The notes beneath the pieces were generated by a model, which was not told the origin of the DNA, searched no databases, and saw only the letters and a list, made by a program, of their open reading frames with translations. The translations under genes and the position numbers were made by a program. A stretch of 64,000 nucleotides of DNA from positions 1 to 64,000 of IMG/VR virus record IMGVR_UViG_3300046507_000773; one strand, written 5' to 3'. Shown piece after piece: positions 8,390 to 48,474 of the stretch (the first letter of the stretch is position 1; every line of letters begins with the position of its first letter).

Positions 8390-9379
8390 ATGCAATGGCA
8401 ATATTGGGCAGCAATTGGTTTGACTGCAGTCCTTTACATCAGTCTTTATCGCTCCGGGTTCTTCAGGTTCTCTAAAGAGCCGCAATTCAATGACATCCTC
8501 TACCAGCGAGGCGATGTCGCCTACGTGTCGCCCACGGCAATCATGCGTGCGCCCTTGCCCAAGTTCGATCCCGAGCGCGTCAAGGAAGACAACGTCGATC
8601 GCCTGGTTCGTCTTCGCATGGTCGAAGTCGCTCAGTCGCTTCTCGATCCTGCGTCCAACATCAAGGACGAAGAAGACCGCAAGCAATTGCGGCGCTACGC
8701 TACGGTGCAGTCGGCAATCCTTGGCCTGTCGATTCCGAAGTCGTTCATTCTGATCGACAAGGAAACCAAGCATCTCTTCATGTCGGTGCTGTCGCGTCTG
8801 GAACTGGTGAGTGTCGAGCGCGTTCCCGTGGGCTCGGACAAAGTCGACGATACCCATGAGCTTGCCTGGATCAACGTGGACATGCATAACGCAATCCTCG
8901 AACGAGAGCGTAAAGCACTCCTGGCCCAGTACAGCAGCGTCGATCATCTGGTCCAGCAAGAGTTCTTGCGCCAAATGGGAAGGAACGAGTACGATTACTT
9001 CCACATGTTTGCTACTCGCTGCCGGCGGCGCTTTAGCCCGCAGCAAAAGCAAAAGGTCGACGACGCAGGCATCAAGTCCGTCATCACTGCCTACGCTGCT
9101 CGCACGGGACTGAAGATTCCGCGCAGCTACGTCTCGTACGATCCGATCTCGGTTCTCTTGATGAACTGGGATGATCTTCCGAAACCGGAAGCGCAGGTCT
9201 ACGACTTCCGTAAGGGAGCAAATGTTCCGCGCTGCGAATGCGGCAACATGATGGGCCTCATGTACACTGGCTTGGTTTGCGATGCCTGTGATACATCAGT
9301 AATGCCTCCTATGGAGGGTTTCAAACCAGTTCCAGCAATCTGGCAATCCTACCCAAAAGCAGAAGGAAAGAATGGCTAA
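8390..9379 (+). CDS. Membrane-anchored protein with C-terminal RNAP beta'-type zinc finger
   Basis: N-terminal TM helix. C-terminal CECG-x8-G-x2-CDAC-x3-V. Confidence 0.7.
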   Translation: MQWQYWAAIGLTAVLYISLYRSGFFRFSKEPQFNDILYQRGDVAYVSPTAIMRAPLPKFDPERVKEDNVDRLVRLRMVEVAQSLLDPASNIKDEEDRKQLRRYATVQSAILGLSIPKSFILIDKETKHLFMSVLSRLELVSVERVPVGSDKVDDTHELAWINVDMHNAILERERKALLAQYSSVDHLVQQEFLRQMGRNEYDYFHMFATRCRRRFSPQQKQKVDDAGIKSVITAYAARTGLKIPRSYVSYDPISVLLMNWDDLPKPEAQVYDFRKGANVPRCECGNMMGLMYTGLVCDACDTSVMPPMEGFKPVPAIWQSYPKAEGKNG

Positions 9380-12088: not shown

Positions 12089-12301
12089 ATGAAGCACTTT
12101 GTCTATTTCATCTCTGGTGTTCTTGTCGCCAGTTTCGTGCAACTCGGCATTCCGGCTGCTAAAGCCTGGGGCCTGCAGGAGCAACTCAAGAAAGACCGTG
12201 CCAAGTACCAGCTCTATCTGGACTGCCGCGACAAAGAAAAAACCAAGTACGCCACTTACGAGTGTCTGCGTCTGAACAACCTGGGCTTCGAACAGCTCTA
12301 A
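12089..12301 (+). CDS. Small protein with signal peptide/TM
   Basis: 70 aa, hydrophobic N-terminus, two Cys. Confidence 0.7.
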   Translation: MKHFVYFISGVLVASFVQLGIPAAKAWGLQEQLKKDRAKYQLYLDCRDKEKTKYATYECLRLNNLGFEQL

Positions 12302-12312
12302 GGAAAAAGAAC

Positions 12313-13359
12313 ATGAAACAGTACTACGACACCGTGAACTTCATTCGCGAAACCGGTGACCAGCTGGAAAACCGTACCGGTATCGATGCGATCACGGTAC
12401 CGGGCGTTGCAATGTATTTCCGCATGAAGGACGGCTTCCCGATGCTGGGTGGTCGCTTTACGCCCTTCAAGTCCATGATCGGTGAACTGTGTGCATTCTA
12501 TCGCGCTTGCACCAGCGCTGCTCAATTCCGTGAGCTGGGCAGCAAGGTCTGGGATAAGAACGCCAATGATCTTGGCGTCGACAATTCGAACGCCTGGCTG
12601 CGTAACCCGTTCCGTGAAGGCGAAGACCACCTGGGCCCGATCTACGGTGACATGTGGCGCGCATGGCCCGGCTACAAAGTTATCGGCCGTCCTTCGATCG
12701 ATGAACCCGATGAAGCACATATGCGCTATGACGAGATCATAGCGCAGATCGAAAAGGACGGCTGGGAGCACATCGGTTACGCCGAGGTCGGCTCACCCGG
12801 TACACCGAAAGGTCTTCTGTATTACAAAAAGATCGATCAACTGGGTGACGCGATCCGTACCGTCATCAAGAACCCGAACAGCCGCCGCATCCTGTTCCAT
12901 GCCTGGAATCCGGCCGTGCTGGACGAAGTCTCGCTGCCTGCCTGTCACCTGCTGTATCAGCTGCTGCCGAATCCGAAAACGAAGGTGCTGAACCTGTGCG
13001 TGTACCTGCGCTCCAACGACATCGGCCTGGGTGCTCCGTACAACATCTCGCAAGCTGCGGCTCAGTTGCACTTCATCTCTCGTCTGACCGGCTATACGCC
13101 TGGCACTATTTCGTACTTCGCTGCTGATGCCCACGTCTACGTCAATCAGCTTGAATGGCTGGACGAACAGCTGGAACTGTGGAATGCGGGTCAGCGTTAC
13201 GAACTGCCGCGCATCGAAATCAGCGACCGGGTGCCGGACTGTAGTCATGATGCAGAAAAAGCAGTGGCCTGGCTTACTGAAGTAGAACCATCGGACTTCA
13301 TCCTGCACGACTACCAGTACCACACCCTGAAAACCCCAACCCCTCCCATGGCGGTGTGA
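12313..13359 (+). CDS. thyA: Thymidylate synthase (ThyA type)
   Basis: NPNSRRILFHAWNP, LPACH catalytic Cys, YLRSNDIGLGAPYN, DAHVYVNQ. Start reassigned to ATG 12313 after AAGGA. Confidence 0.95.
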   Translation: MKQYYDTVNFIRETGDQLENRTGIDAITVPGVAMYFRMKDGFPMLGGRFTPFKSMIGELCAFYRACTSAAQFRELGSKVWDKNANDLGVDNSNAWLRNPFREGEDHLGPIYGDMWRAWPGYKVIGRPSIDEPDEAHMRYDEIIAQIEKDGWEHIGYAEVGSPGTPKGLLYYKKIDQLGDAIRTVIKNPNSRRILFHAWNPAVLDEVSLPACHLLYQLLPNPKTKVLNLCVYLRSNDIGLGAPYNISQAAAQLHFISRLTGYTPGTISYFAADAHVYVNQLEWLDEQLELWNAGQRYELPRIEISDRVPDCSHDAEKAVAWLTEVEPSDFILHDYQYHTLKTPTPPMAV

Positions 13360-13973: not shown

Positions 13974-15071
13974 ATGCAGTTGAATTTCGATGACGAGGAC
14001 ACCCTCGTCACCAACCAAGCAGCACCGGAAGGTGCTTCCGCAGCAGACGTCGCTAAGCGTGTGAACGTCAGCGAGAAGCGCATCATCAACGGTAAAACGG
14101 ACGTGAACCAGCTGGTTCCGTTCAAGCACAAGTGGGCCTGGGACAAGTATCTGGCAGGTTGCGCAAACCACTGGATGCCGCAAGAAGTGAACATGCAGCG
14201 CGATATCGAACTGTGGAAAGATCCGAAAGGTCTGTCCGATGACGAACGTCGCCTGGTCAAGCGCAACCTCGGCTTCTTCGTGACCGCCGACTCGCTGGCA
14301 GCCAACAACATCGTGCTGGGCACCTATCGCCACATCACGTCGCCGGAATGCCGCCAGTACCTGCTGCGTCAAGCTTTCGAAGAAGCGATCCACACCCACG
14401 CCTACCAGTACATCGTCGAGTCGCTCGGCCTGGACGAGAAGGAAGTCTTCAACGCGTACAACGAGATCCCGTCGATCCGTAATAAGGACCAGTTCCTGAT
14501 TCCGTTCATCGACGTTTTGACCAACCCGGAATTCAAAACCGGCACGATCGAAGCGGATCAGACGCTCCTGAAGTCCCTGATCGTTTTCGCCTGCATGATG
14601 GAAGGCCTGTTCTTCTACGTGGGCTTCACGCAGATCCTGGCACTGGGTCGTCAAAACAAGATGGTCGGCGCCGCCGAGCAGTATCAATACATCTTGCGCG
14701 ACGAATCGATGCACTGCAACTTCGGCATCGACCTGATCAACTCGATCAAGGCAGAAGACGATCGCCTGTTCACGCCGGCATTCCAGGAAGAGATCAAAGC
14801 CCTGTTCCATCAGGCTGTTGAACTCGAATGCGCTTACGCTGACGACACCATGCCGCGTGGCGTGCTGGGTCTGAATGCAGGCATGTTCAAAGCGTACCTG
14901 CGCTTCATCGCCAACCGTCGTGCTGTGCAGATCGGCTTGCCGCCGCTCTTCGCACAGGAAGAAAACCCGTTCCCGTGGATGGCCGAGATGATCGACCTGA
15001 AGAAGGAGCGTAACTTCTTCGAAACCCGTGTTACCGAATATCAAACCGGTGGCGCACTGAACTGGGATTAA
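13974..15071 (+). CDS. nrdB: Ribonucleotide reductase class Ia beta subunit
   Basis: [23 protein letters not shown] (radical Tyr retained), [23 protein letters not shown]. Confidence 0.97.
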
Positions 15072-16590: not shown

Positions 16591-17121
16591 ATGGCCTGGG
16601 AAGCAACACACGGGTATTCGAAGCACCCGCACTACAAGCGTTGGGATGACATGATCCAGCGCTGCTATAATTCGAAAGATGTAAAGTTCGAGCTCTACGG
16701 CGCTAAAGGCATTATTGTCGCCGCAATCTGGGATCGTCGTAATCCCTTAGGTGTAGGCAACTTCATCACCTGGCTCGAACAGCAATTGGCAAAGCGTCCC
16801 GAAGAAGAAAAGGACAAACCTTTCAAGGTCGCCCGCCGCAAGGTCACGGATATCTATTCGCCGGAAACTTGCTACATTACGACCAATGTGGATGCATGCC
16901 AAAAACGTAGTACCTGTATCCTCACTTTCGAAAAGGTAGTCGAACTTCGTCGCTTCAAGAAAGCAAACCCAAGCATGACTTTGATTGACATGTGCATCAA
17001 GTTCGGTATCACGCACAAGTACACTCTGAGCCGCTGCTTGAAAGGTATTTCGTGGCCCAATGTTGATTCGGTGGAACCGCCCATCGCTGATCTTGGGGGC
17101 AACGGGAAAAAGAAAGCATAA
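16591..17121 (+). CDS. HNH homing-endonuclease-like protein, degenerate active site
   Basis: HPHYKRWDDMIQRCYN...LYGAKGI...W...F N-terminal signature, YSPETC, and a C-terminal HTH-like segment. Confidence 0.7.
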   Translation: MAWEATHGYSKHPHYKRWDDMIQRCYNSKDVKFELYGAKGIIVAAIWDRRNPLGVGNFITWLEQQLAKRPEEEKDKPFKVARRKVTDIYSPETCYITTNVDACQKRSTCILTFEKVVELRRFKKANPSMTLIDMCIKFGITHKYTLSRCLKGISWPNVDSVEPPIADLGGNGKKKA

Positions 17122-17124
17122 GAC

Positions 17125-17154
17125 GAGGGACTTCGGTCCCTCTTCTTTTTTTTT
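17125..17154 (+). terminator. Intrinsic terminator
   Basis: GAGGGAC-TTCG-GTCCCTC followed by a long T tract. Confidence 0.9.
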
Positions 17155-17284
17155 GTTTCCGTGACAATGAATGATATGTGTTGTCAATTAAAAACACACC
17201 GCATTCGACACCATATGTCGTAACCCACGAAGGATGCTCGAAAGCATCTCTAACCTAATTCTGCCCGCCAAACCAGGAATGCCC

Positions 17285-17665
17285 ATGTCCTCCGAACTTA
17301 ACCTCATTGATGTCAACTCCCCGCACCTCATCGAGGTCTCGGACGAGCAGGCGCGCCGTTTCGATGTCACGGGTTTCGACACCGCAAACAATCCGCACAA
17401 CGCCGATCGCCAGGGTTTTCAGGCCCGCTTCGGTCGCACCACCCTCGTCTTCCAAAGTCACGTACCCAAGGAAGGCGAAACTCCCGACGGCATTACCGAT
17501 GAAGTGCTGTTTGCCATCCTGGAAAAGCGTCTGGAGTCGTACAACTGCGTGATCGAGAAATGCCCGATCAACAGTGAAGCTTTGCTGCACCTGCAGCTGG
17601 CCCATGGCCTCATTCGTCAACGCACTTTGCGCGACGAAACGCTGGTCACTGGCCCCAAGTATTAA
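17285..17665 (+). CDS. Tad1-like (Thoeris anti-defence 1) nucleotide-sponge homolog
   Basis: TLVFQ...KE...GITDEVLFAILEKRLESY...N..AL.HL..A...R..R follows the Tad1 pattern as recalled. Start placed at ATG 17285 by RBS spacing. Confidence 0.6.
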   Translation: MSSELNLIDVNSPHLIEVSDEQARRFDVTGFDTANNPHNADRQGFQARFGRTTLVFQSHVPKEGETPDGITDEVLFAILEKRLESYNCVIEKCPINSEALLHLQLAHGLIRQRTLRDETLVTGPKY

Positions 17666-17695
17666 TCGTAAGTAAGAACTACCTTTCCAATAATT

Positions 17696-17725
17696 ACTCC
17701 TCACTCTAATGGAGTGAGGAGTTTT
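17696..17725 (+). terminator. Terminator-like hairpin
   Basis: ACTCCTCACTC/GAGTGAGGAGT 11-bp stem followed by TTTATGCC. Confidence 0.75.
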
Positions 17726-17748
17726 ATGCCCACTTGAAGGAATTATCA

Positions 17749-18168
17749 ATGAATCAACTCGAACGCCCAATCGTCATCAAACACTTTGTGACGGAAGAAC
17801 AGCCCTTTAACATGATGCAGAAAGCTGCCATGATGGAAGTCGGCAACATGCTGACCAAGTTCATCAAGAAAGCTTGGGCTGAAGGTTTTTACTTCACCGT
17901 TACGCCGTTCCGTGACCACGTCAAGGGCGTCATGATCTACCACGGCTTGCGTGCCTACGTCCTCAAACCTGTCGTTGGCGTAGCGAAGTTCAAGCAAGCA
18001 GAACGCATCCAACAACTGGGGAAAGACCTGCACCACTATCTGCAAACGGCAGTGCAATTCAACCTGATCGTTGAGATCGAATCGGACACCAGCCAAGTCT
18101 ACTTCCGCCACGTAGACCGTCCGATTGTGATTCACTTCCGTTCGTCGACCGCGATCAAGCCCGACTGA
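17749..18168 (+). CDS. Hypothetical protein
   Basis: GAAGGA RBS before MNQLERP. Confidence 0.75.
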   Translation: MNQLERPIVIKHFVTEEQPFNMMQKAAMMEVGNMLTKFIKKAWAEGFYFTVTPFRDHVKGVMIYHGLRAYVLKPVVGVAKFKQAERIQQLGKDLHHYLQTAVQFNLIVEIESDTSQVYFRHVDRPIVIHFRSSTAIKPD

Positions 18169-46296: not shown

Positions 46297-48474
46297 ATGA
46301 ATCCGTTCCAAAACAAAACCAAGAAGCCGGCACTGCCGGATTCGCAAACCGCGGTCATGCTGCGCTCCACCCTGAGCCAGCTGAACAAGAACAGCTCGCT
46401 GCTGAGCTCGCAAGTTGCCCGCGGCGCCTTCGCCCTGGAAGGTCTGGACGACGAAACCGTCCTGGCCATGGACAACGCAGCTGAAGGCCTGAACGTCGCC
46501 CTGGAACAGATCTTCCAGGAAGCCGGCTTCAAAGCAACCCCGCAGCAGAAGCAGTCGGCAATGATCGCCGGCATGATGGGCGGCGACGTGGGCGCCTACC
46601 TGGGCCACGCTGTTTCCCTGGAAGGTTTCCAGGCCAAGAACACCGACGTCGTGATCGTCGGCGCCGCTGACGCAATCGCCTCGCGTCCGGCAATGGAAGC
46701 GTACGACGAGAAGGAACTGAAGAACTCGATCGCCTACTCGGTCGCGTACAACATGAACTCGCCGCGTCAAGACGCGTTCGGCGAAGCCTTCTTCCCGACC
46801 GTCGTCGTGAACCCGGACCAGGTCGGCTACCAGATCTCGATCCGCCTGACCTACGTCTACCCGGAAGTCCGCCGCAACATCGACGGCTCCGTCAACGACT
46901 TCAAGAAGCGCAACATCATCCAGGCAATCGTCGACCCGTCGATCCTGAAGACCGAGCAGCTGAAGGTCGTGCCGGTGTTCCGTAACGAATCGAAGGCCAA
47001 CTTCGTCGACGAAACCCTGCTGCCGCCGAAGAACATCACCTTCGAAGGCGAGACCATCACCACCAGCGCCCTGCGCTTCGACAACAAGTTCTCGCTGCTG
47101 GGCATCTCCCAGACCCCGGCCCTGCTGGAAACCGGCGTCATGGACAGCACCGACGCGCTGGACGCGGCGATCACGCTGAGCAACGTCTACATGTCGGTCG
47201 CCGGCAAAGTGGGCGGCGTCGACAAGACCGAGGTGTTCAAGTTCATGACGGCCAACATGCCGCTGTCGAACTTCATCTCGATGCAGCAAGACGACTACCG
47301 CATGATGCAAGTCACCTTCATGACCGAAGGCCTGCTGATGACCGGTAACACCAAGACCGTCGCTGGCGCCGCTTCGGGCGTGCTGGCCGACATCGCTGCA
47401 CAGAAGGTCTCGGTCCGTCTGGAACTGACCGTGAACGGCACCGTGAACGTCGAACTGGGTACCACCAACCTGATGGCATCGAAAGTGCGCGTCAAGTCGG
47501 TCACCGACGAAGACGGCAACCTGCTGTCGCTGACCTCGCCGGGCGTCGGCAAGGACATCGCGGACCTGTTCGCAACGGCTGAAGCCATCGGCTACGACCT
47601 GCAAGCGCAGCGTACCAACAGCAACCGTCGTCAGCGCGGCACCCTGCTGGGCCAGACGATCCAGAACCAGGTGTACAACGTGCCCCTGCGCTCGCCGATC
47701 ACCATCCCGCGTCCGCAAACCGTTGGCGATGCCAACGACGCCTCGGACCTGGCTGCACTGATCTCGACGACCCGCATCCGCATCTCGAACGCGGCCGTCG
47801 ACAAGCTGCTGGAAACCGCTGACCAGCTGAAAGAGCTGGTTGCCCAGAACGACCTGCTGGAAAACAACCTGCCGATCCTGGGTATCGCCCGTCACCTGGT
47901 GACCGCCTTCTACGACGAGTTCACCGTCGACGTGCAAGCGTCGATGAACAACCTGACCTCGTCCGAGAAGTACGACGACATCAGCGCCACGCTGATCAAC
48001 CAACTGCGCGACCTCGTGTATCGCATGCTGGTGAAATCGGCCTACCAGGCTGCTGCTGACGCGCTGGCTGGCGGCATCGCTCCGATGCCTGACGTCATCA
48101 TCGGTACCGATCCGAAGACCGCTCGCTACCTGATGGTTTCGGGCGACCTGCGCACCCTCGGCACCGAAGTGAACATCAAGCTGGTCACCACGCTGAACCT
48201 GCAGATGCGCGACACCATCATCGTCGCCTTCGGCCAGCCGAACGCCGGCGACGGTACGCCGAACCCGCTGCACTACGGCAACATGGTCTGGAAACCGGAA
48301 ATGACCCTGATCATGCCGACCCAGCGTAACGGCTCGAACTCGAAAGAGATCACCGTCACCCCGTCGTTCAACCACATCGTGAACGTGCCGATCATGGCCC
48401 GTATCTACGTGAAGGGCATCAGCGACGCGGTGGGCAGCAAAAGCACTGTTGCCTTCGAACAGGTCGGTCCGTAA
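46297..48474 (+). CDS. Major capsid protein (phiKZ gp120-like)
   Basis: 725 aa, extreme codon bias, N-terminal A/S-x-E maturation-type sites (ALE, SLE, AME), QDAFGEAFFPT, synteny. Confidence 0.92.
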   Translation: MNPFQNKTKKPALPDSQTAVMLRSTLSQLNKNSSLLSSQVARGAFALEGLDDETVLAMDNAAEGLNVALEQIFQEAGFKATPQQKQSAMIAGMMGGDVGAYLGHAVSLEGFQAKNTDVVIVGAADAIASRPAMEAYDEKELKNSIAYSVAYNMNSPRQDAFGEAFFPTVVVNPDQVGYQISIRLTYVYPEVRRNIDGSVNDFKKRNIIQAIVDPSILKTEQLKVVPVFRNESKANFVDETLLPPKNITFEGETITTSALRFDNKFSLLGISQTPALLETGVMDSTDALDAAITLSNVYMSVAGKVGGVDKTEVFKFMTANMPLSNFISMQQDDYRMMQVTFMTEGLLMTGNTKTVAGAASGVLADIAAQKVSVRLELTVNGTVNVELGTTNLMASKVRVKSVTDEDGNLLSLTSPGVGKDIADLFATAEAIGYDLQAQRTNSNRRQRGTLLGQTIQNQVYNVPLRSPITIPRPQTVGDANDASDLAALISTTRIRISNAAVDKLLETADQLKELVAQNDLLENNLPILGIARHLVTAFYDEFTVDVQASMNNLTSSEKYDDISATLINQLRDLVYRMLVKSAYQAAADALAGGIAPMPDVIIGTDPKTARYLMVSGDLRTLGTEVNIKLVTTLNLQMRDTIIVAFGQPNAGDGTPNPLHYGNMVWKPEMTLIMPTQRNGSNSKEITVTPSFNHIVNVPIMARIYVKGISDAVGSKSTVAFEQVGP

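What the first reader, a model, noticed from the sequence alone, without database searches (positions are those of the whole stretch)
17285..17665. Divergent Tad1-like immune-signal sponge
Seen: TLVFQSHVPKEGETPDGITDEVLFAILEKRLESYNCVIEKCPINSEALLHLQLAHGLIRQRTLRD. Known (recalled): Tad1 has T.KFQKG.RKE...HGV.D.DLLEIVRDRL.SFQ.GPF..RENA.AL.H.EEAL.W...R...R and sequesters Thoeris gcADPR and some CBASS cyclic nucleotides. The scaffold matches but pocket-region positions differ (FQAGPF to YNCVIE, W absent). Inference: a sponge with altered ligand range.
Basis: partly seen in the sequence, partly recalled or inferred. Interest (0 to 1): 0.65.

Follow-up and report, generated by a model that had tools for sequence, protein, structure and literature searches.

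The report
Divergent Tad1-family sponge in jumbo phage
A 126-residue gene of a phiKZ-like jumbo phage from rhizosphere metagenomes is a real but very divergent member of the Tad1 family of phage "sponges" that soak up bacterial immune signals. It belongs to a rare sub-branch that keeps three of the four tested pocket residues but has lost the family's loop motif, its C-terminal lid and the cyclic-trinucleotide site.

Summary
Window 17285-17665 (+) is an intact 126-aa gene under purifying selection (dN/dS 0.17), and the quoted peptide is residues 53-117.

It is a homologue of Thoeris anti-defence 1 (Tad1):
- Its profile finds only the Tad1/gp184 family among 1.8 billion proteins.
- hhalign of its sub-branch against canonical members gives 99.9 % probability (E 1e-31).
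- The family profile hits CbTad1, CmTad1 and phiKZ gp184 at 1e-19 to 1e-27.
- The AF2 model (pLDDT 90) matches only Tad1 structures (Foldseek prob 1.0, Z 7.7-9.1).
- A homodimer is predicted.

The host genome is a phiKZ-type jumbo phage. Tad1 is already known in phiKZ as gp184, which is packaged and injected. This copy lacks gp184's N-terminal extension.

It belongs to a six-member, long-branch sub-branch.
- Retained: the aromatic, Asn and first Arg of the gcADPR/dinucleotide pocket (Y86, N96, R113).
- Lost: the second Arg, the FQxGP[FY] loop, the RGVEGT lid and the trinucleotide-binding Arg/Thr.

"Sponge" is therefore likely. "Altered ligand range" is plausible but untested. I file it as a variant of a known kind, of moderate interest.

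The parts
17125..17153 (+). Terminator-like hairpin with a T-run that ends the upstream 176-aa HNH-like gene, so the Tad1-like gene begins a unit of its own.
   Evidence: The consensus scan found a 7-bp stem (5 GC pairs) followed by a T-run. The sequence was read.
17275..17278 (+). Shine-Dalgarno-like AGGA, 6 nt before ATG 17285.
   Evidence: Read in the sequence. The same AGGA-N6-ATG arrangement occurs in orthologue L008.
17285..17665 (+). CDS of 126 aa (P0001): a divergent Tad1-family protein. Predicted strands are at residues 6-9, 15-18, 25-29 and 51-56, and helices at 72-84 and 94-121.
   Evidence: dN/dS against L008 is 0.17.
17696..17728 (+). Conserved RNA hairpin (stem 17697-17706 / 17712-17721, loop TAATG) followed by an invariant TTTATG. 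It is a probable terminator of the Tad1-like gene and/or a 5' element of the next gene.
   Evidence: It is present at the same place in all five orthologous loci, with 34 invariant columns. The stem has 10 pairs, two of them with compensatory changes, and G-U wobbles that fit the + strand. It is unique in the window and has no Rfam match.

Best explanation
The gene encodes a small cytoplasmic Tad1-family sponge made by a phiKZ-type jumbo phage after infection. It most likely forms a symmetric homo-oligomer, at least the intertwined dimer. It would then sequester a host nucleotide immune messenger in the pocket at the dimer interface, lined by Y86, N96 and R113. The most probable ligand class is a TIR-derived cyclic ADP-ribose isomer or a cGAS-like cyclic dinucleotide. 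Sequestration would keep a Thoeris- or CBASS-type effector from being switched on. Compared with the characterised Tad1 proteins, it has no trinucleotide site, no C-terminal lid and a rebuilt alpha1-alpha2 loop, so its ligand spectrum or binding mode probably differs. Shown here: homology, predicted fold, predicted dimer, which residues are kept or lost, purifying selection and phage context. Inferred: ligand binding, the identity of the ligand, the oligomeric state beyond the dimer, and the timing of expression.
For: Homology: a profile search of 1.8 billion representatives returned 64 hits. Apart from two multi-stretch matches in long proteins that I set aside as likely spurious (P0008, P0011), those I examined carry the Tad1/gp184 motif set. 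The resulting family profile hits phiKZ gp184 at 4.5e-27, CbTad1 at 2.7e-22 and CmTad1 at 2.2e-19. The sub-branch alone hits them at 7e-4 to 2.5e-3. hhalign gives 99.9 %, E 1.1e-31. The three PHROGs it touches are exactly the three that true Tad1 and gp184 proteins hit.
Fold: the AF2 model has pLDDT 89.9. The Foldseek top 20 are all Tad1 (E 3e-4 to 1e-2, prob 1.0, TM 0.6-0.67), and the next hit is at E 0.47. VIA-align gives Z 7.7-9.1 over 105-110 residues for 8 Tad1 entries, and the next match covers only 44 residues.
Oligomer: the homodimer score is 0.80 against a best control of 0.03. That mark was reached by 20 of 30 proteins solved as pairs of one chain and by 1 of 23 solved as single chains. 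Runs agree in at least 85 % of contacts, and the partner's pLDDT is at least 77. N96, R113 and R116 lie in the predicted interface.
Pocket: Y86, N96 and R113 correspond to CbTad1 F82, N92 and R109, and are kept in 5 of 6 sub-branch members (residue roles).
Selection and context: dN/dS is 0.17. The genome has a phiKZ-type major capsid protein (PF25620, 3.7e-193). phiKZ's own Tad1-domain protein gp184 is described as an injected anti-Thoeris/anti-CBASS sponge.
Against: No binding or anti-defence assay exists for this sub-branch. The second pocket Arg (CbTad1 R113, conserved in 43 of 53 canonical members) is D117 here and is variable within the sub-branch. The lid motif RGVEGT (30-39 of 53) is absent. 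The Q-x-G-P-[FY] loop (G in 49 of 53) is replaced. These are among the best conserved features of the family, so the pocket may no longer bind a nucleotide. About a quarter of the sponge homologues tested by Hadary et al. inhibited none of seven systems. The dimer score may partly reflect the model's memory of solved Tad1 complexes. The hexamer could not be tested.
Confidence: 0.6

Rival explanations
1. It is an ordinary Tad1 with the usual specificity (3'cADPR with or without cGAMP). On this reading the motif changes are neutral drift in a fast-evolving family, and there is no altered ligand range.
For: Three of the four mutationally validated pocket residues are retained. Loss of the trinucleotide Arg/Thr pair and of Trp is common in canonical members, gp184 included. 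Tad1 loops differ widely even between CbTad1 and CmTad1.
Against: The replaced positions (G59, Q87, G89, R117 and the RGVEGT tail) are conserved in 43-49 of 53 canonical members for the first four, and in 30-39 of 53 for the tail. They are replaced throughout the sub-branch, which has its own invariant residues E98, L101, G108 and L109. The branch is long and well supported.
Confidence: 0.2
2. It is a Tad1-fold protein that no longer binds nucleotides and does something else, for example acting as a protein-binding inhibitor or a structural or scaffolding factor.
For: The lid, the second Arg and the loop motif are lost. The new invariant hydrophobic stripe on helix 2 (L100, L101, L105, L109, G108) could be a protein-protein surface. 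phiKZ gp184 shows that a protein carrying this domain can also be a capsid component.
Against: Y86, N96 and R113 would not be expected to stay conserved without a pocket to serve. In gp184, the role in the capsid is assigned to the N-terminal part, and the Tad1 domain is described as released and injected.
Confidence: 0.15
3. It is the functional equivalent of phiKZ gp184: a sponge packaged in the head and injected with the DNA.
For: It is the only Tad1-domain gene found in the 226.8-kb record, and the phage has a phiKZ-type capsid.
Against: There is no N-terminal extension. The Tad1 domain starts at about residue 5, whereas gp184 (230 aa), PhiPA3 gp217 (189 aa) and FLC9 gp131 (338 aa) all carry one. 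There is no synteny with the gp184 locus. The gene lies among nucleotide-metabolism genes (thymidylate synthase, RNR beta), not head genes. The record is only 86 % complete, so a gp184 orthologue could be missing.
Confidence: 0.05

Closest known systems
Tad1 (Thoeris anti-defence 1): CbTad1 (PDB 7UAV/7UAW/8SMD/8KBE-H), CmTad1 (8KBB-D), SBSphiJ7 Tad1
   Same: Both are small phage proteins with an N-terminal antiparallel sheet and two C-terminal helices. A homodimer is predicted here. The conserved F-Q strand, G-x-T, the R of D-R-L, the aromatic/Asn/Arg of the gcADPR-dinucleotide pocket, and the C-x-x-N and A-L-x-H of helix 2 are all present.
   Different: Identity is only 17-22 %. The second pocket Arg is missing, as is the ordered C-terminal lid (CbTad1 residues 116-122). 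The trinucleotide-binding R90/T97 are P94/L101 here, and W105 is L109. The alpha1-alpha2 loop FQAGPF is YNCVIE. Unlike the clostridial Tad1 proteins, it carries the proteobacterial-branch motif R-[FY]-D-[IV]-T-G-F-D-T-x-x-N-P in the sheet.
phiKZ gp184 (PDB 8Y6V chain I; called Tad1 in recent phiKZ literature) and PhiPA3 gp217 / 201phi2-1 homologues
   Same: These are Tad1 domains in phiKZ-type jumbo phages. The family profile hits gp184 at 4.5e-27, and the sub-branch profile alone at 7e-4. gp184 likewise lacks the trinucleotide Arg/Thr/Trp set.
   Different: gp184 has a roughly 100-aa N-terminal part that sits in the inner vertex complex of the capsid. It is processed by the head protease, and the sponge is reported to be injected. 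It keeps FQAGPFACEEN and the GTEGT lid. The present protein has neither the extension nor those motifs, and its locus is not syntenic.
Agrobacterium phage OLIVR5 gp79c and relatives (annotated 'ABC transporter ATPase' or hypothetical)
   Same: This is the closest annotated relative: 35 % identity over 105 residues, E 2e-9. It is a single-domain protein of 133 aa and shares the T-G-F-D-T-x-x-N-P motif.
   Different: gp79c is a canonical family member, matching CbTad1 at 5.6e-15 and gp184 at 2e-19, with the FQSGPF loop and the lid.
Acb2 (anti-CBASS 2)
   Same: By analogy only: Acb2 is also a small hexameric phage sponge that binds dinucleotides, and binds trinucleotides through phosphate-contacting residues at a three-fold pocket.
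   Different: It is a different family. No Acb2 entry appeared in the sequence or structure searches against PDB.

Membership tests
Tad1 family (Thoeris anti-defence 1) | Significant sequence homology to experimentally characterised Tad1 proteins | tested here: met
   hhalign of the sub-branch against canonical members gives 99.9 %, E 1.1e-31. The family profile hits CbTad1 at 2.7e-22, CmTad1 at 2.2e-19 and gp184 at 4.5e-27. The sub-branch profile alone reaches 7e-4 to 2.5e-3. The single sequence reaches only E 0.5.
Tad1 family (Thoeris anti-defence 1) | Fold: N-terminal antiparallel beta-sheet followed by two helices | tested here: met
   The AF2 model (pLDDT 89.9) has 4 strands and helices 72-84 and 94-121. 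The Foldseek top 20 are all Tad1 at prob 1.0. VIA-align gives Z 7.7-9.1 over 105-110 residues. This is a predicted model, not a solved structure.
Tad1 family (Thoeris anti-defence 1) | Homo-oligomer: a dimer that assembles into a D3 hexamer | tested here: inconclusive
   A dimer is predicted with score 0.80 against a best control of 0.03. The mark was reached by 20 of 30 known homo-pairs and by 1 of 23 single chains. The hexamer could not be submitted. The CmTad1 hexamer-interface residues R88, T95, K96, E99, M102, W103 and K106 correspond to P94, L101, H102, L105, G108, L109 and Q112 here, so most are changed.
Tad1 family (Thoeris anti-defence 1) | gcADPR / cyclic-dinucleotide pocket residues (CbTad1 F82, N92, R109, R113) | tested here: inconclusive
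   Three of the four are retained as Y86, N96 and R113. The fourth is D117, with R116 adjacent, and is variable across the sub-branch (residue roles).
Tad1 family (Thoeris anti-defence 1) | C-terminal lid that orders over the ligand (CbTad1 residues 116-122; family motif R-G-V-E-G-T) | tested here: not met
   The motif is present in 30-39 of 53 canonical members and absent from all six sub-branch members, which end 5-9 residues after helix 2.
Tad1 family (Thoeris anti-defence 1) | Cyclic-trinucleotide pocket (CbTad1 R90 and T97) | tested here: not met
   These positions are P94 and L101 here. L101 is invariant in the sub-branch. This feature does not define the whole family: only 7 of 53 canonical members have Arg at the first position and 7 of 53 have Thr at the second, and gp184 lacks them too.
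Tad1 family (Thoeris anti-defence 1) | Binds 3'cADPR/2'cADPR and relieves Thoeris (with or without CBASS) defence | not testable with these tools
   This needs binding and plaque assays.
phiKZ gp184-type packaged/injected Tad1 | N-terminal extension that anchors the protein in the capsid and is removed by the head protease | tested here: not met
   The product is 126 aa, and the Tad1 domain begins at about residue 5. In gp184 the domain occupies residues 101-227 of 230. The loci are not syntenic.

The most novel reading that the evidence does not exclude
The six-member sub-branch may be a lid-less Tad1 variant whose rebuilt pocket has been retargeted to an immune messenger that no characterised Tad1 binds. 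That could be a still unidentified TIR or CD-NTase product of rhizosphere Burkholderiales-type hosts. Alternatively, the pocket may have been reshaped to avoid decoy nucleotides that hosts use to detect sponges. In the first case the protein could serve as bait to capture and identify that molecule.
Probability: 0.2. Interest if true: 0.75.

Novelty: new variant of a known kind. Interest (0 to 1): 0.4.

Why it matters
Sponge proteins have served as tools for discovering immune messengers: Tad1 revealed 3'cADPR and 2'cADPR, and MoTad2 revealed His-ADPR. Homologues with rebuilt pockets are therefore the natural place to look for unknown signals. Recent reviews name Tad1 (gp184 of phiKZ) as the only anti-defence protein described so far in jumbo phages. 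This gene shows a second, free-standing and strongly diverged form of the domain in an uncultured rhizosphere lineage of such phages. If it turns out to bind the usual ligands, the finding is simply a useful annotation for a protein that Pfam and PHROGs leave as 'unknown'.

Tried and rejected
- Pfam gave no hit. This is uninformative, because bona fide Tad1 and gp184 proteins also give none.
- Megablast of the 6-kb neighbourhood against phage records found no match.
- The word-based protein search found only the protein itself and one 85 % relative, so I used the exhaustive profile search.
- I asked for a hexamer prediction as two chain entries of three copies. I then ran the documented two-copy job, so the hexamer remains untested.
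- The supplementary tables of Hadary et al. are not held. I could not check whether a member of this sub-branch was among the 20 Tad1 homologues they tested.
- Synteny with the phiKZ/PhiPA3 gp184 locus and with FLC9 gp131: none found.
- Rfam found nothing credible for the conserved hairpin.
- The ESM Atlas look-up of the conserved downstream 139-aa gene gave no usable lead.
- No RNA runs hold the locus, so read laying was not used and expression is untested.
- The sigma-70 promoter scan found nothing convincing upstream. That is expected if the phage uses its own RNA polymerases, as phiKZ does; I state this from my own knowledge.

Full report
**1. What is in the sequence**

Window 17285-17665 (+) is an intact gene of 126 codons plus a stop.

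The frame is open from 17234, but ATG 17285 is the supported start:
- AGGA at 17275-17278 lies 6 nt upstream.
- The same arrangement precedes the orthologue in L008.
- All orthologues start M-S/T-x-x-E.

The gene stands alone between two hairpins. A terminator-like hairpin with a T-run (17125-17153) closes the preceding HNH-like gene. A conserved hairpin follows at 17696-17728. Against its 85 %-identical orthologue, dN/dS is 0.17 at dS 0.64, so this is a protein under purifying selection.

**2. Genomic setting**

The window is part of a 226,810-bp IMG/VR virus record estimated to be 86 % complete.
- It encodes a phiKZ-type major capsid protein at 46297-48474 (PF25620, 3.7e-193).
- The nearest cultured relatives by that protein are Burkholderia phage FLC9 (50 %) and Ralstonia phages RP12 and RP31 (41-42 %).
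- The DNA is held by rhizosphere metagenomes.
- Nearby genes include thymidylate synthase (12262-13359), ribonucleotide reductase beta (13974-15071) and a 176-aa HNH-like gene (16591-17121).
- This is the only Tad1-domain gene detectable in the record.

**3. Homology to Tad1**

Direct tests are weak on their own but all point the same way.
- Pfam gives nothing. True Tad1 and gp184 proteins also give nothing, so Pfam evidently has no model that detects this family.
- Three PHROGs are touched, at 2e-5, 1e-4 and 0.2. They are exactly the PHROGs of Bacillus-phage Tad1, PhiPA3 gp217 and phiKZ gp184.
- phmmer against PDB puts five Tad1 chains on top, but at E 0.5.

The word-based search found only one relative, so I used the exhaustive search. 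It returned 64 proteins at E < 1e-3 out of 1.8 billion. Two were multi-stretch matches in long proteins, which I set aside as likely spurious. The others I examined carry the Tad1/gp184 motif set.

Profile evidence then becomes strong:
- A 59-sequence alignment headed by the query hits gp184 (8Y6V) at 4.5e-27, CbTad1 (7UAV) at 2.7e-22 and CmTad1 (8KBB) at 2.2e-19.
- The six closest sequences alone reach the same entries at 7e-4 to 2.5e-3.
- hhalign of those six against 31 canonical members gives 99.9 %, E 1.1e-31 over 111 columns.
- The closest annotated relative, Agrobacterium phage OLIVR5 gp79c (E 2e-9), carries the label 'ABC transporter ATPase', the same mislabel as the CbTad1 PDB entry. 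It matches CbTad1 at 5.6e-15.

**4. Fold and oligomer**

The AlphaFold2 model built on the family alignment has mean pLDDT 89.9 and pTM 0.76. It shows four strands followed by helices 72-84 and 94-121.
- Foldseek against PDB lists 20 Tad1 chains first (E 3e-4 to 1e-2, probability 1.0, TM 0.6-0.67), then drops to E 0.47.
- VIA-align gives Z 7.7-9.1, rmsd 4.0-4.8 Å and 105-110 aligned residues for eight Tad1 entries. The next row aligns only 44 residues of the helical hairpin.

Two copies co-fold with a score of 0.80 against a best control of 0.03.
- That mark was reached by 20 of 30 proteins solved as homo-pairs and by 1 of 23 solved as single chains.
- The runs agree in at least 85 % of contacts, and the partner's pLDDT is at least 77.
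- My own alignment was used, so these counts hold only roughly.
- Tad1 complexes are solved, so the pass may reflect likeness rather than independent evidence.
- N96, R113 and R116 lie in the predicted interface. In Tad1 that is where the gcADPR pocket sits.

A hexamer could not be submitted.

**5. What is kept and what is lost**

Li et al. (bioRxiv 10.1101/2023.11.15.567273) report the following for Tad1:
- CbTad1 binds gcADPR and 2',3'-cGAMP in a dimer-interface pocket. F82A/N92A and R109A/R113A each disrupt binding there.
- The C-terminal residues 116-122 form a lid over the ligand.
- The hexamer binds two trinucleotides through R90 and T97.
- The hexamer contacts in CmTad1 involve R88, T95, K96, Q98, E99, M102, W103 and K106.

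This region aligns without gaps. PDB chain numbers are the paper's numbers plus one. The correspondences are:

| CbTad1 feature | This protein |
|---|---|
| F82 | Y86 |
| N92 | N96 |
| R109 | R113 |
| R113 | D117 (R116 adjacent) |
| R90 | P94 |
| T97 | L101 |
| W105 | L109 |
| lid, residues 116-122 | absent |

Column counts over 53 canonical and 6 sub-branch sequences show three classes of position.
- **Shared by both groups:** [YF]26, G30, F31, D32, N36, F56, Q57, G69, T71, R82, aromatic 86, C93, N96, A99, L100, H102 and R113.
- **Conserved only in canonical members and replaced throughout the sub-branch:** G59 (49/53), Q87 (49/53), G89 (49/53), P90 (32/53), [FY]91 (42/53), T114 (43/53), R117 (43/53) and the tail R-G-V-E-G-T (30-39/53).
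- **Invariant only in the sub-branch:** E98, L101, G108 and L109.

The trinucleotide Arg/Thr pair and the Trp are minority features even among canonical members (7, 7 and 9 of 53). gp184 also lacks them. Their absence here is therefore not special. The loss of the loop motif, the second Arg and the lid is special.

**6. Phylogenetic position and conservation of the locus**

In a quick maximum-likelihood tree of 64 domains, the six sequences form one group on a branch of length 1.02 (SH-aLRT 99). That group is separate from all canonical members and from the references OLIVR5 gp79c, Bacillus phage Chotacabras gp161, FLC9 gp131, PhiPA3 gp217 and phiKZ gp184. The careful search did not finish, so only this split should be read from the tree.

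All five other members lie in metagenomic contigs with the same gene order: a 175-176-aa HNH-like gene, the Tad1-like gene, a 139-148-aa gene, then a gene of about 200-236 aa. Thymidylate kinase or synthase lies upstream. None of the six has an N-terminal extension.

**7. Relation to what is known**

Tad1 in jumbo phages is not new.
- phiKZ gp184 is a minor capsid protein of the inner vertex complex and is processed by the head protease (PMC11297242).
- Recent work calls it Tad1. It describes the C-terminal part as liberated and injected, and as blocking Thoeris and CBASS (bioRxiv 10.1101/2025.11.23.690004; PMC13282480).
- Hadary et al. collected 1,587 non-redundant Tad1 homologues and tested 20 of them. 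They inhibited CBASS and type I Thoeris. About a quarter of all the sponges tested inhibited none of seven systems (PMC12393519).

The present protein is therefore a member of a known family, in a known kind of phage. Two things are new. It is a free-standing form in a phiKZ-type phage, with no packaging extension and no synteny with the gp184 locus. It also belongs to a rare sub-branch with a rebuilt pocket periphery.

**8. Mechanism and rivals**

Most likely (0.6), it is a cytoplasmic sponge. It would bind a cADPR-type or dinucleotide messenger at the Y86/N96/R113 site of a homodimer or higher oligomer, without trinucleotide capacity and without the usual lid.

Within that reading, an altered ligand preference or binding mode is plausible, at about one chance in three overall. 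It remains an inference from the pattern of conservation.

The rivals are:
- An ordinary Tad1 with drifted loops (0.2).
- A Tad1 fold that has lost nucleotide binding and gained another role; the new leucine stripe on helix 2 could be a protein interface (0.15).
- A packaged gp184 equivalent (0.05), which the missing extension and the genomic position argue against.

**9. Verdict**

I rate it a new variant of a known kind, interest 0.4.

Noticed in passing
window 17689-17728 (also L008:570-608, L009:~947-985, L010:~1322-1360, L011:~8408-8446, L012:~8419-8456): A 40-nt intergenic element directly after the Tad1-like gene has 34 invariant columns across six loci whose flanking proteins are only 31-85 % identical. 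It reads AATAWTT, then a 10-bp hairpin (ACTCCTCRCYC / GRGTGAGGAGT), then an invariant TTTATG. The stem shows two compensatory pairs and G-U wobbles that fit a + strand RNA. The element is unique in the window and has no Rfam match. It could be a sequence-specific terminator, a promoter or 5' leader of the next gene, or a protein-binding operator.
   Followed up: partly
L002:2335-3351 (Burkholderia phage FLC9 gp131, LC667451.1): The closest cultured relative encodes a 338-aa fusion. An N-terminal cyclophilin-type peptidyl-prolyl isomerase (PF00160, 2.5e-44, residues 3-162) is joined to a C-terminal canonical Tad1 domain (phrog_2428, 5.9e-29, residues 210-337). I did not find this architecture described in the papers I read.
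   Followed up: partly
window 17749-18168 (+): A 139-aa gene always follows the Tad1-like gene in the sub-branch loci (76 % identity in L008, 56 % in L009, and genes of 148 aa in L011 and L012). It has no Pfam or PHROG hit and no usable ESM Atlas lead. The ORF listing starts it at TTG 17734, but ATG 17749, preceded by GAAGGA, looks the better start. It may be a second accessory or anti-defence gene.
   Followed up: partly
window 16591-17121 (+): The 176-aa HNH-like gene (phrog_3377, 1.7e-17) holds the same position upstream of the Tad1-like gene in L009 (78 % identity) and L010 (53 %). Genes of 175-176 aa sit there in L011 and L012. It therefore behaves as a fixed gene of this phage lineage rather than a roaming homing endonuclease.
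   Followed up: no
window 17238-17254: A small hairpin (GATGCT-CGAA-AGCATC) in the 5' leader of the Tad1-like gene is conserved in L008. The whole 130-nt leader is conserved between these two phages and contains two TATG motifs.
   Followed up: no
P0015, P0007, P0025, P0065 and other hits: Many family members are multi-domain. P0015 (284 aa) appears to carry two Tad1-like domains in tandem. Others have N-terminal extensions of 100-300 aa of unknown function, reminiscent of the gp184 packaging arm.
   Followed up: no
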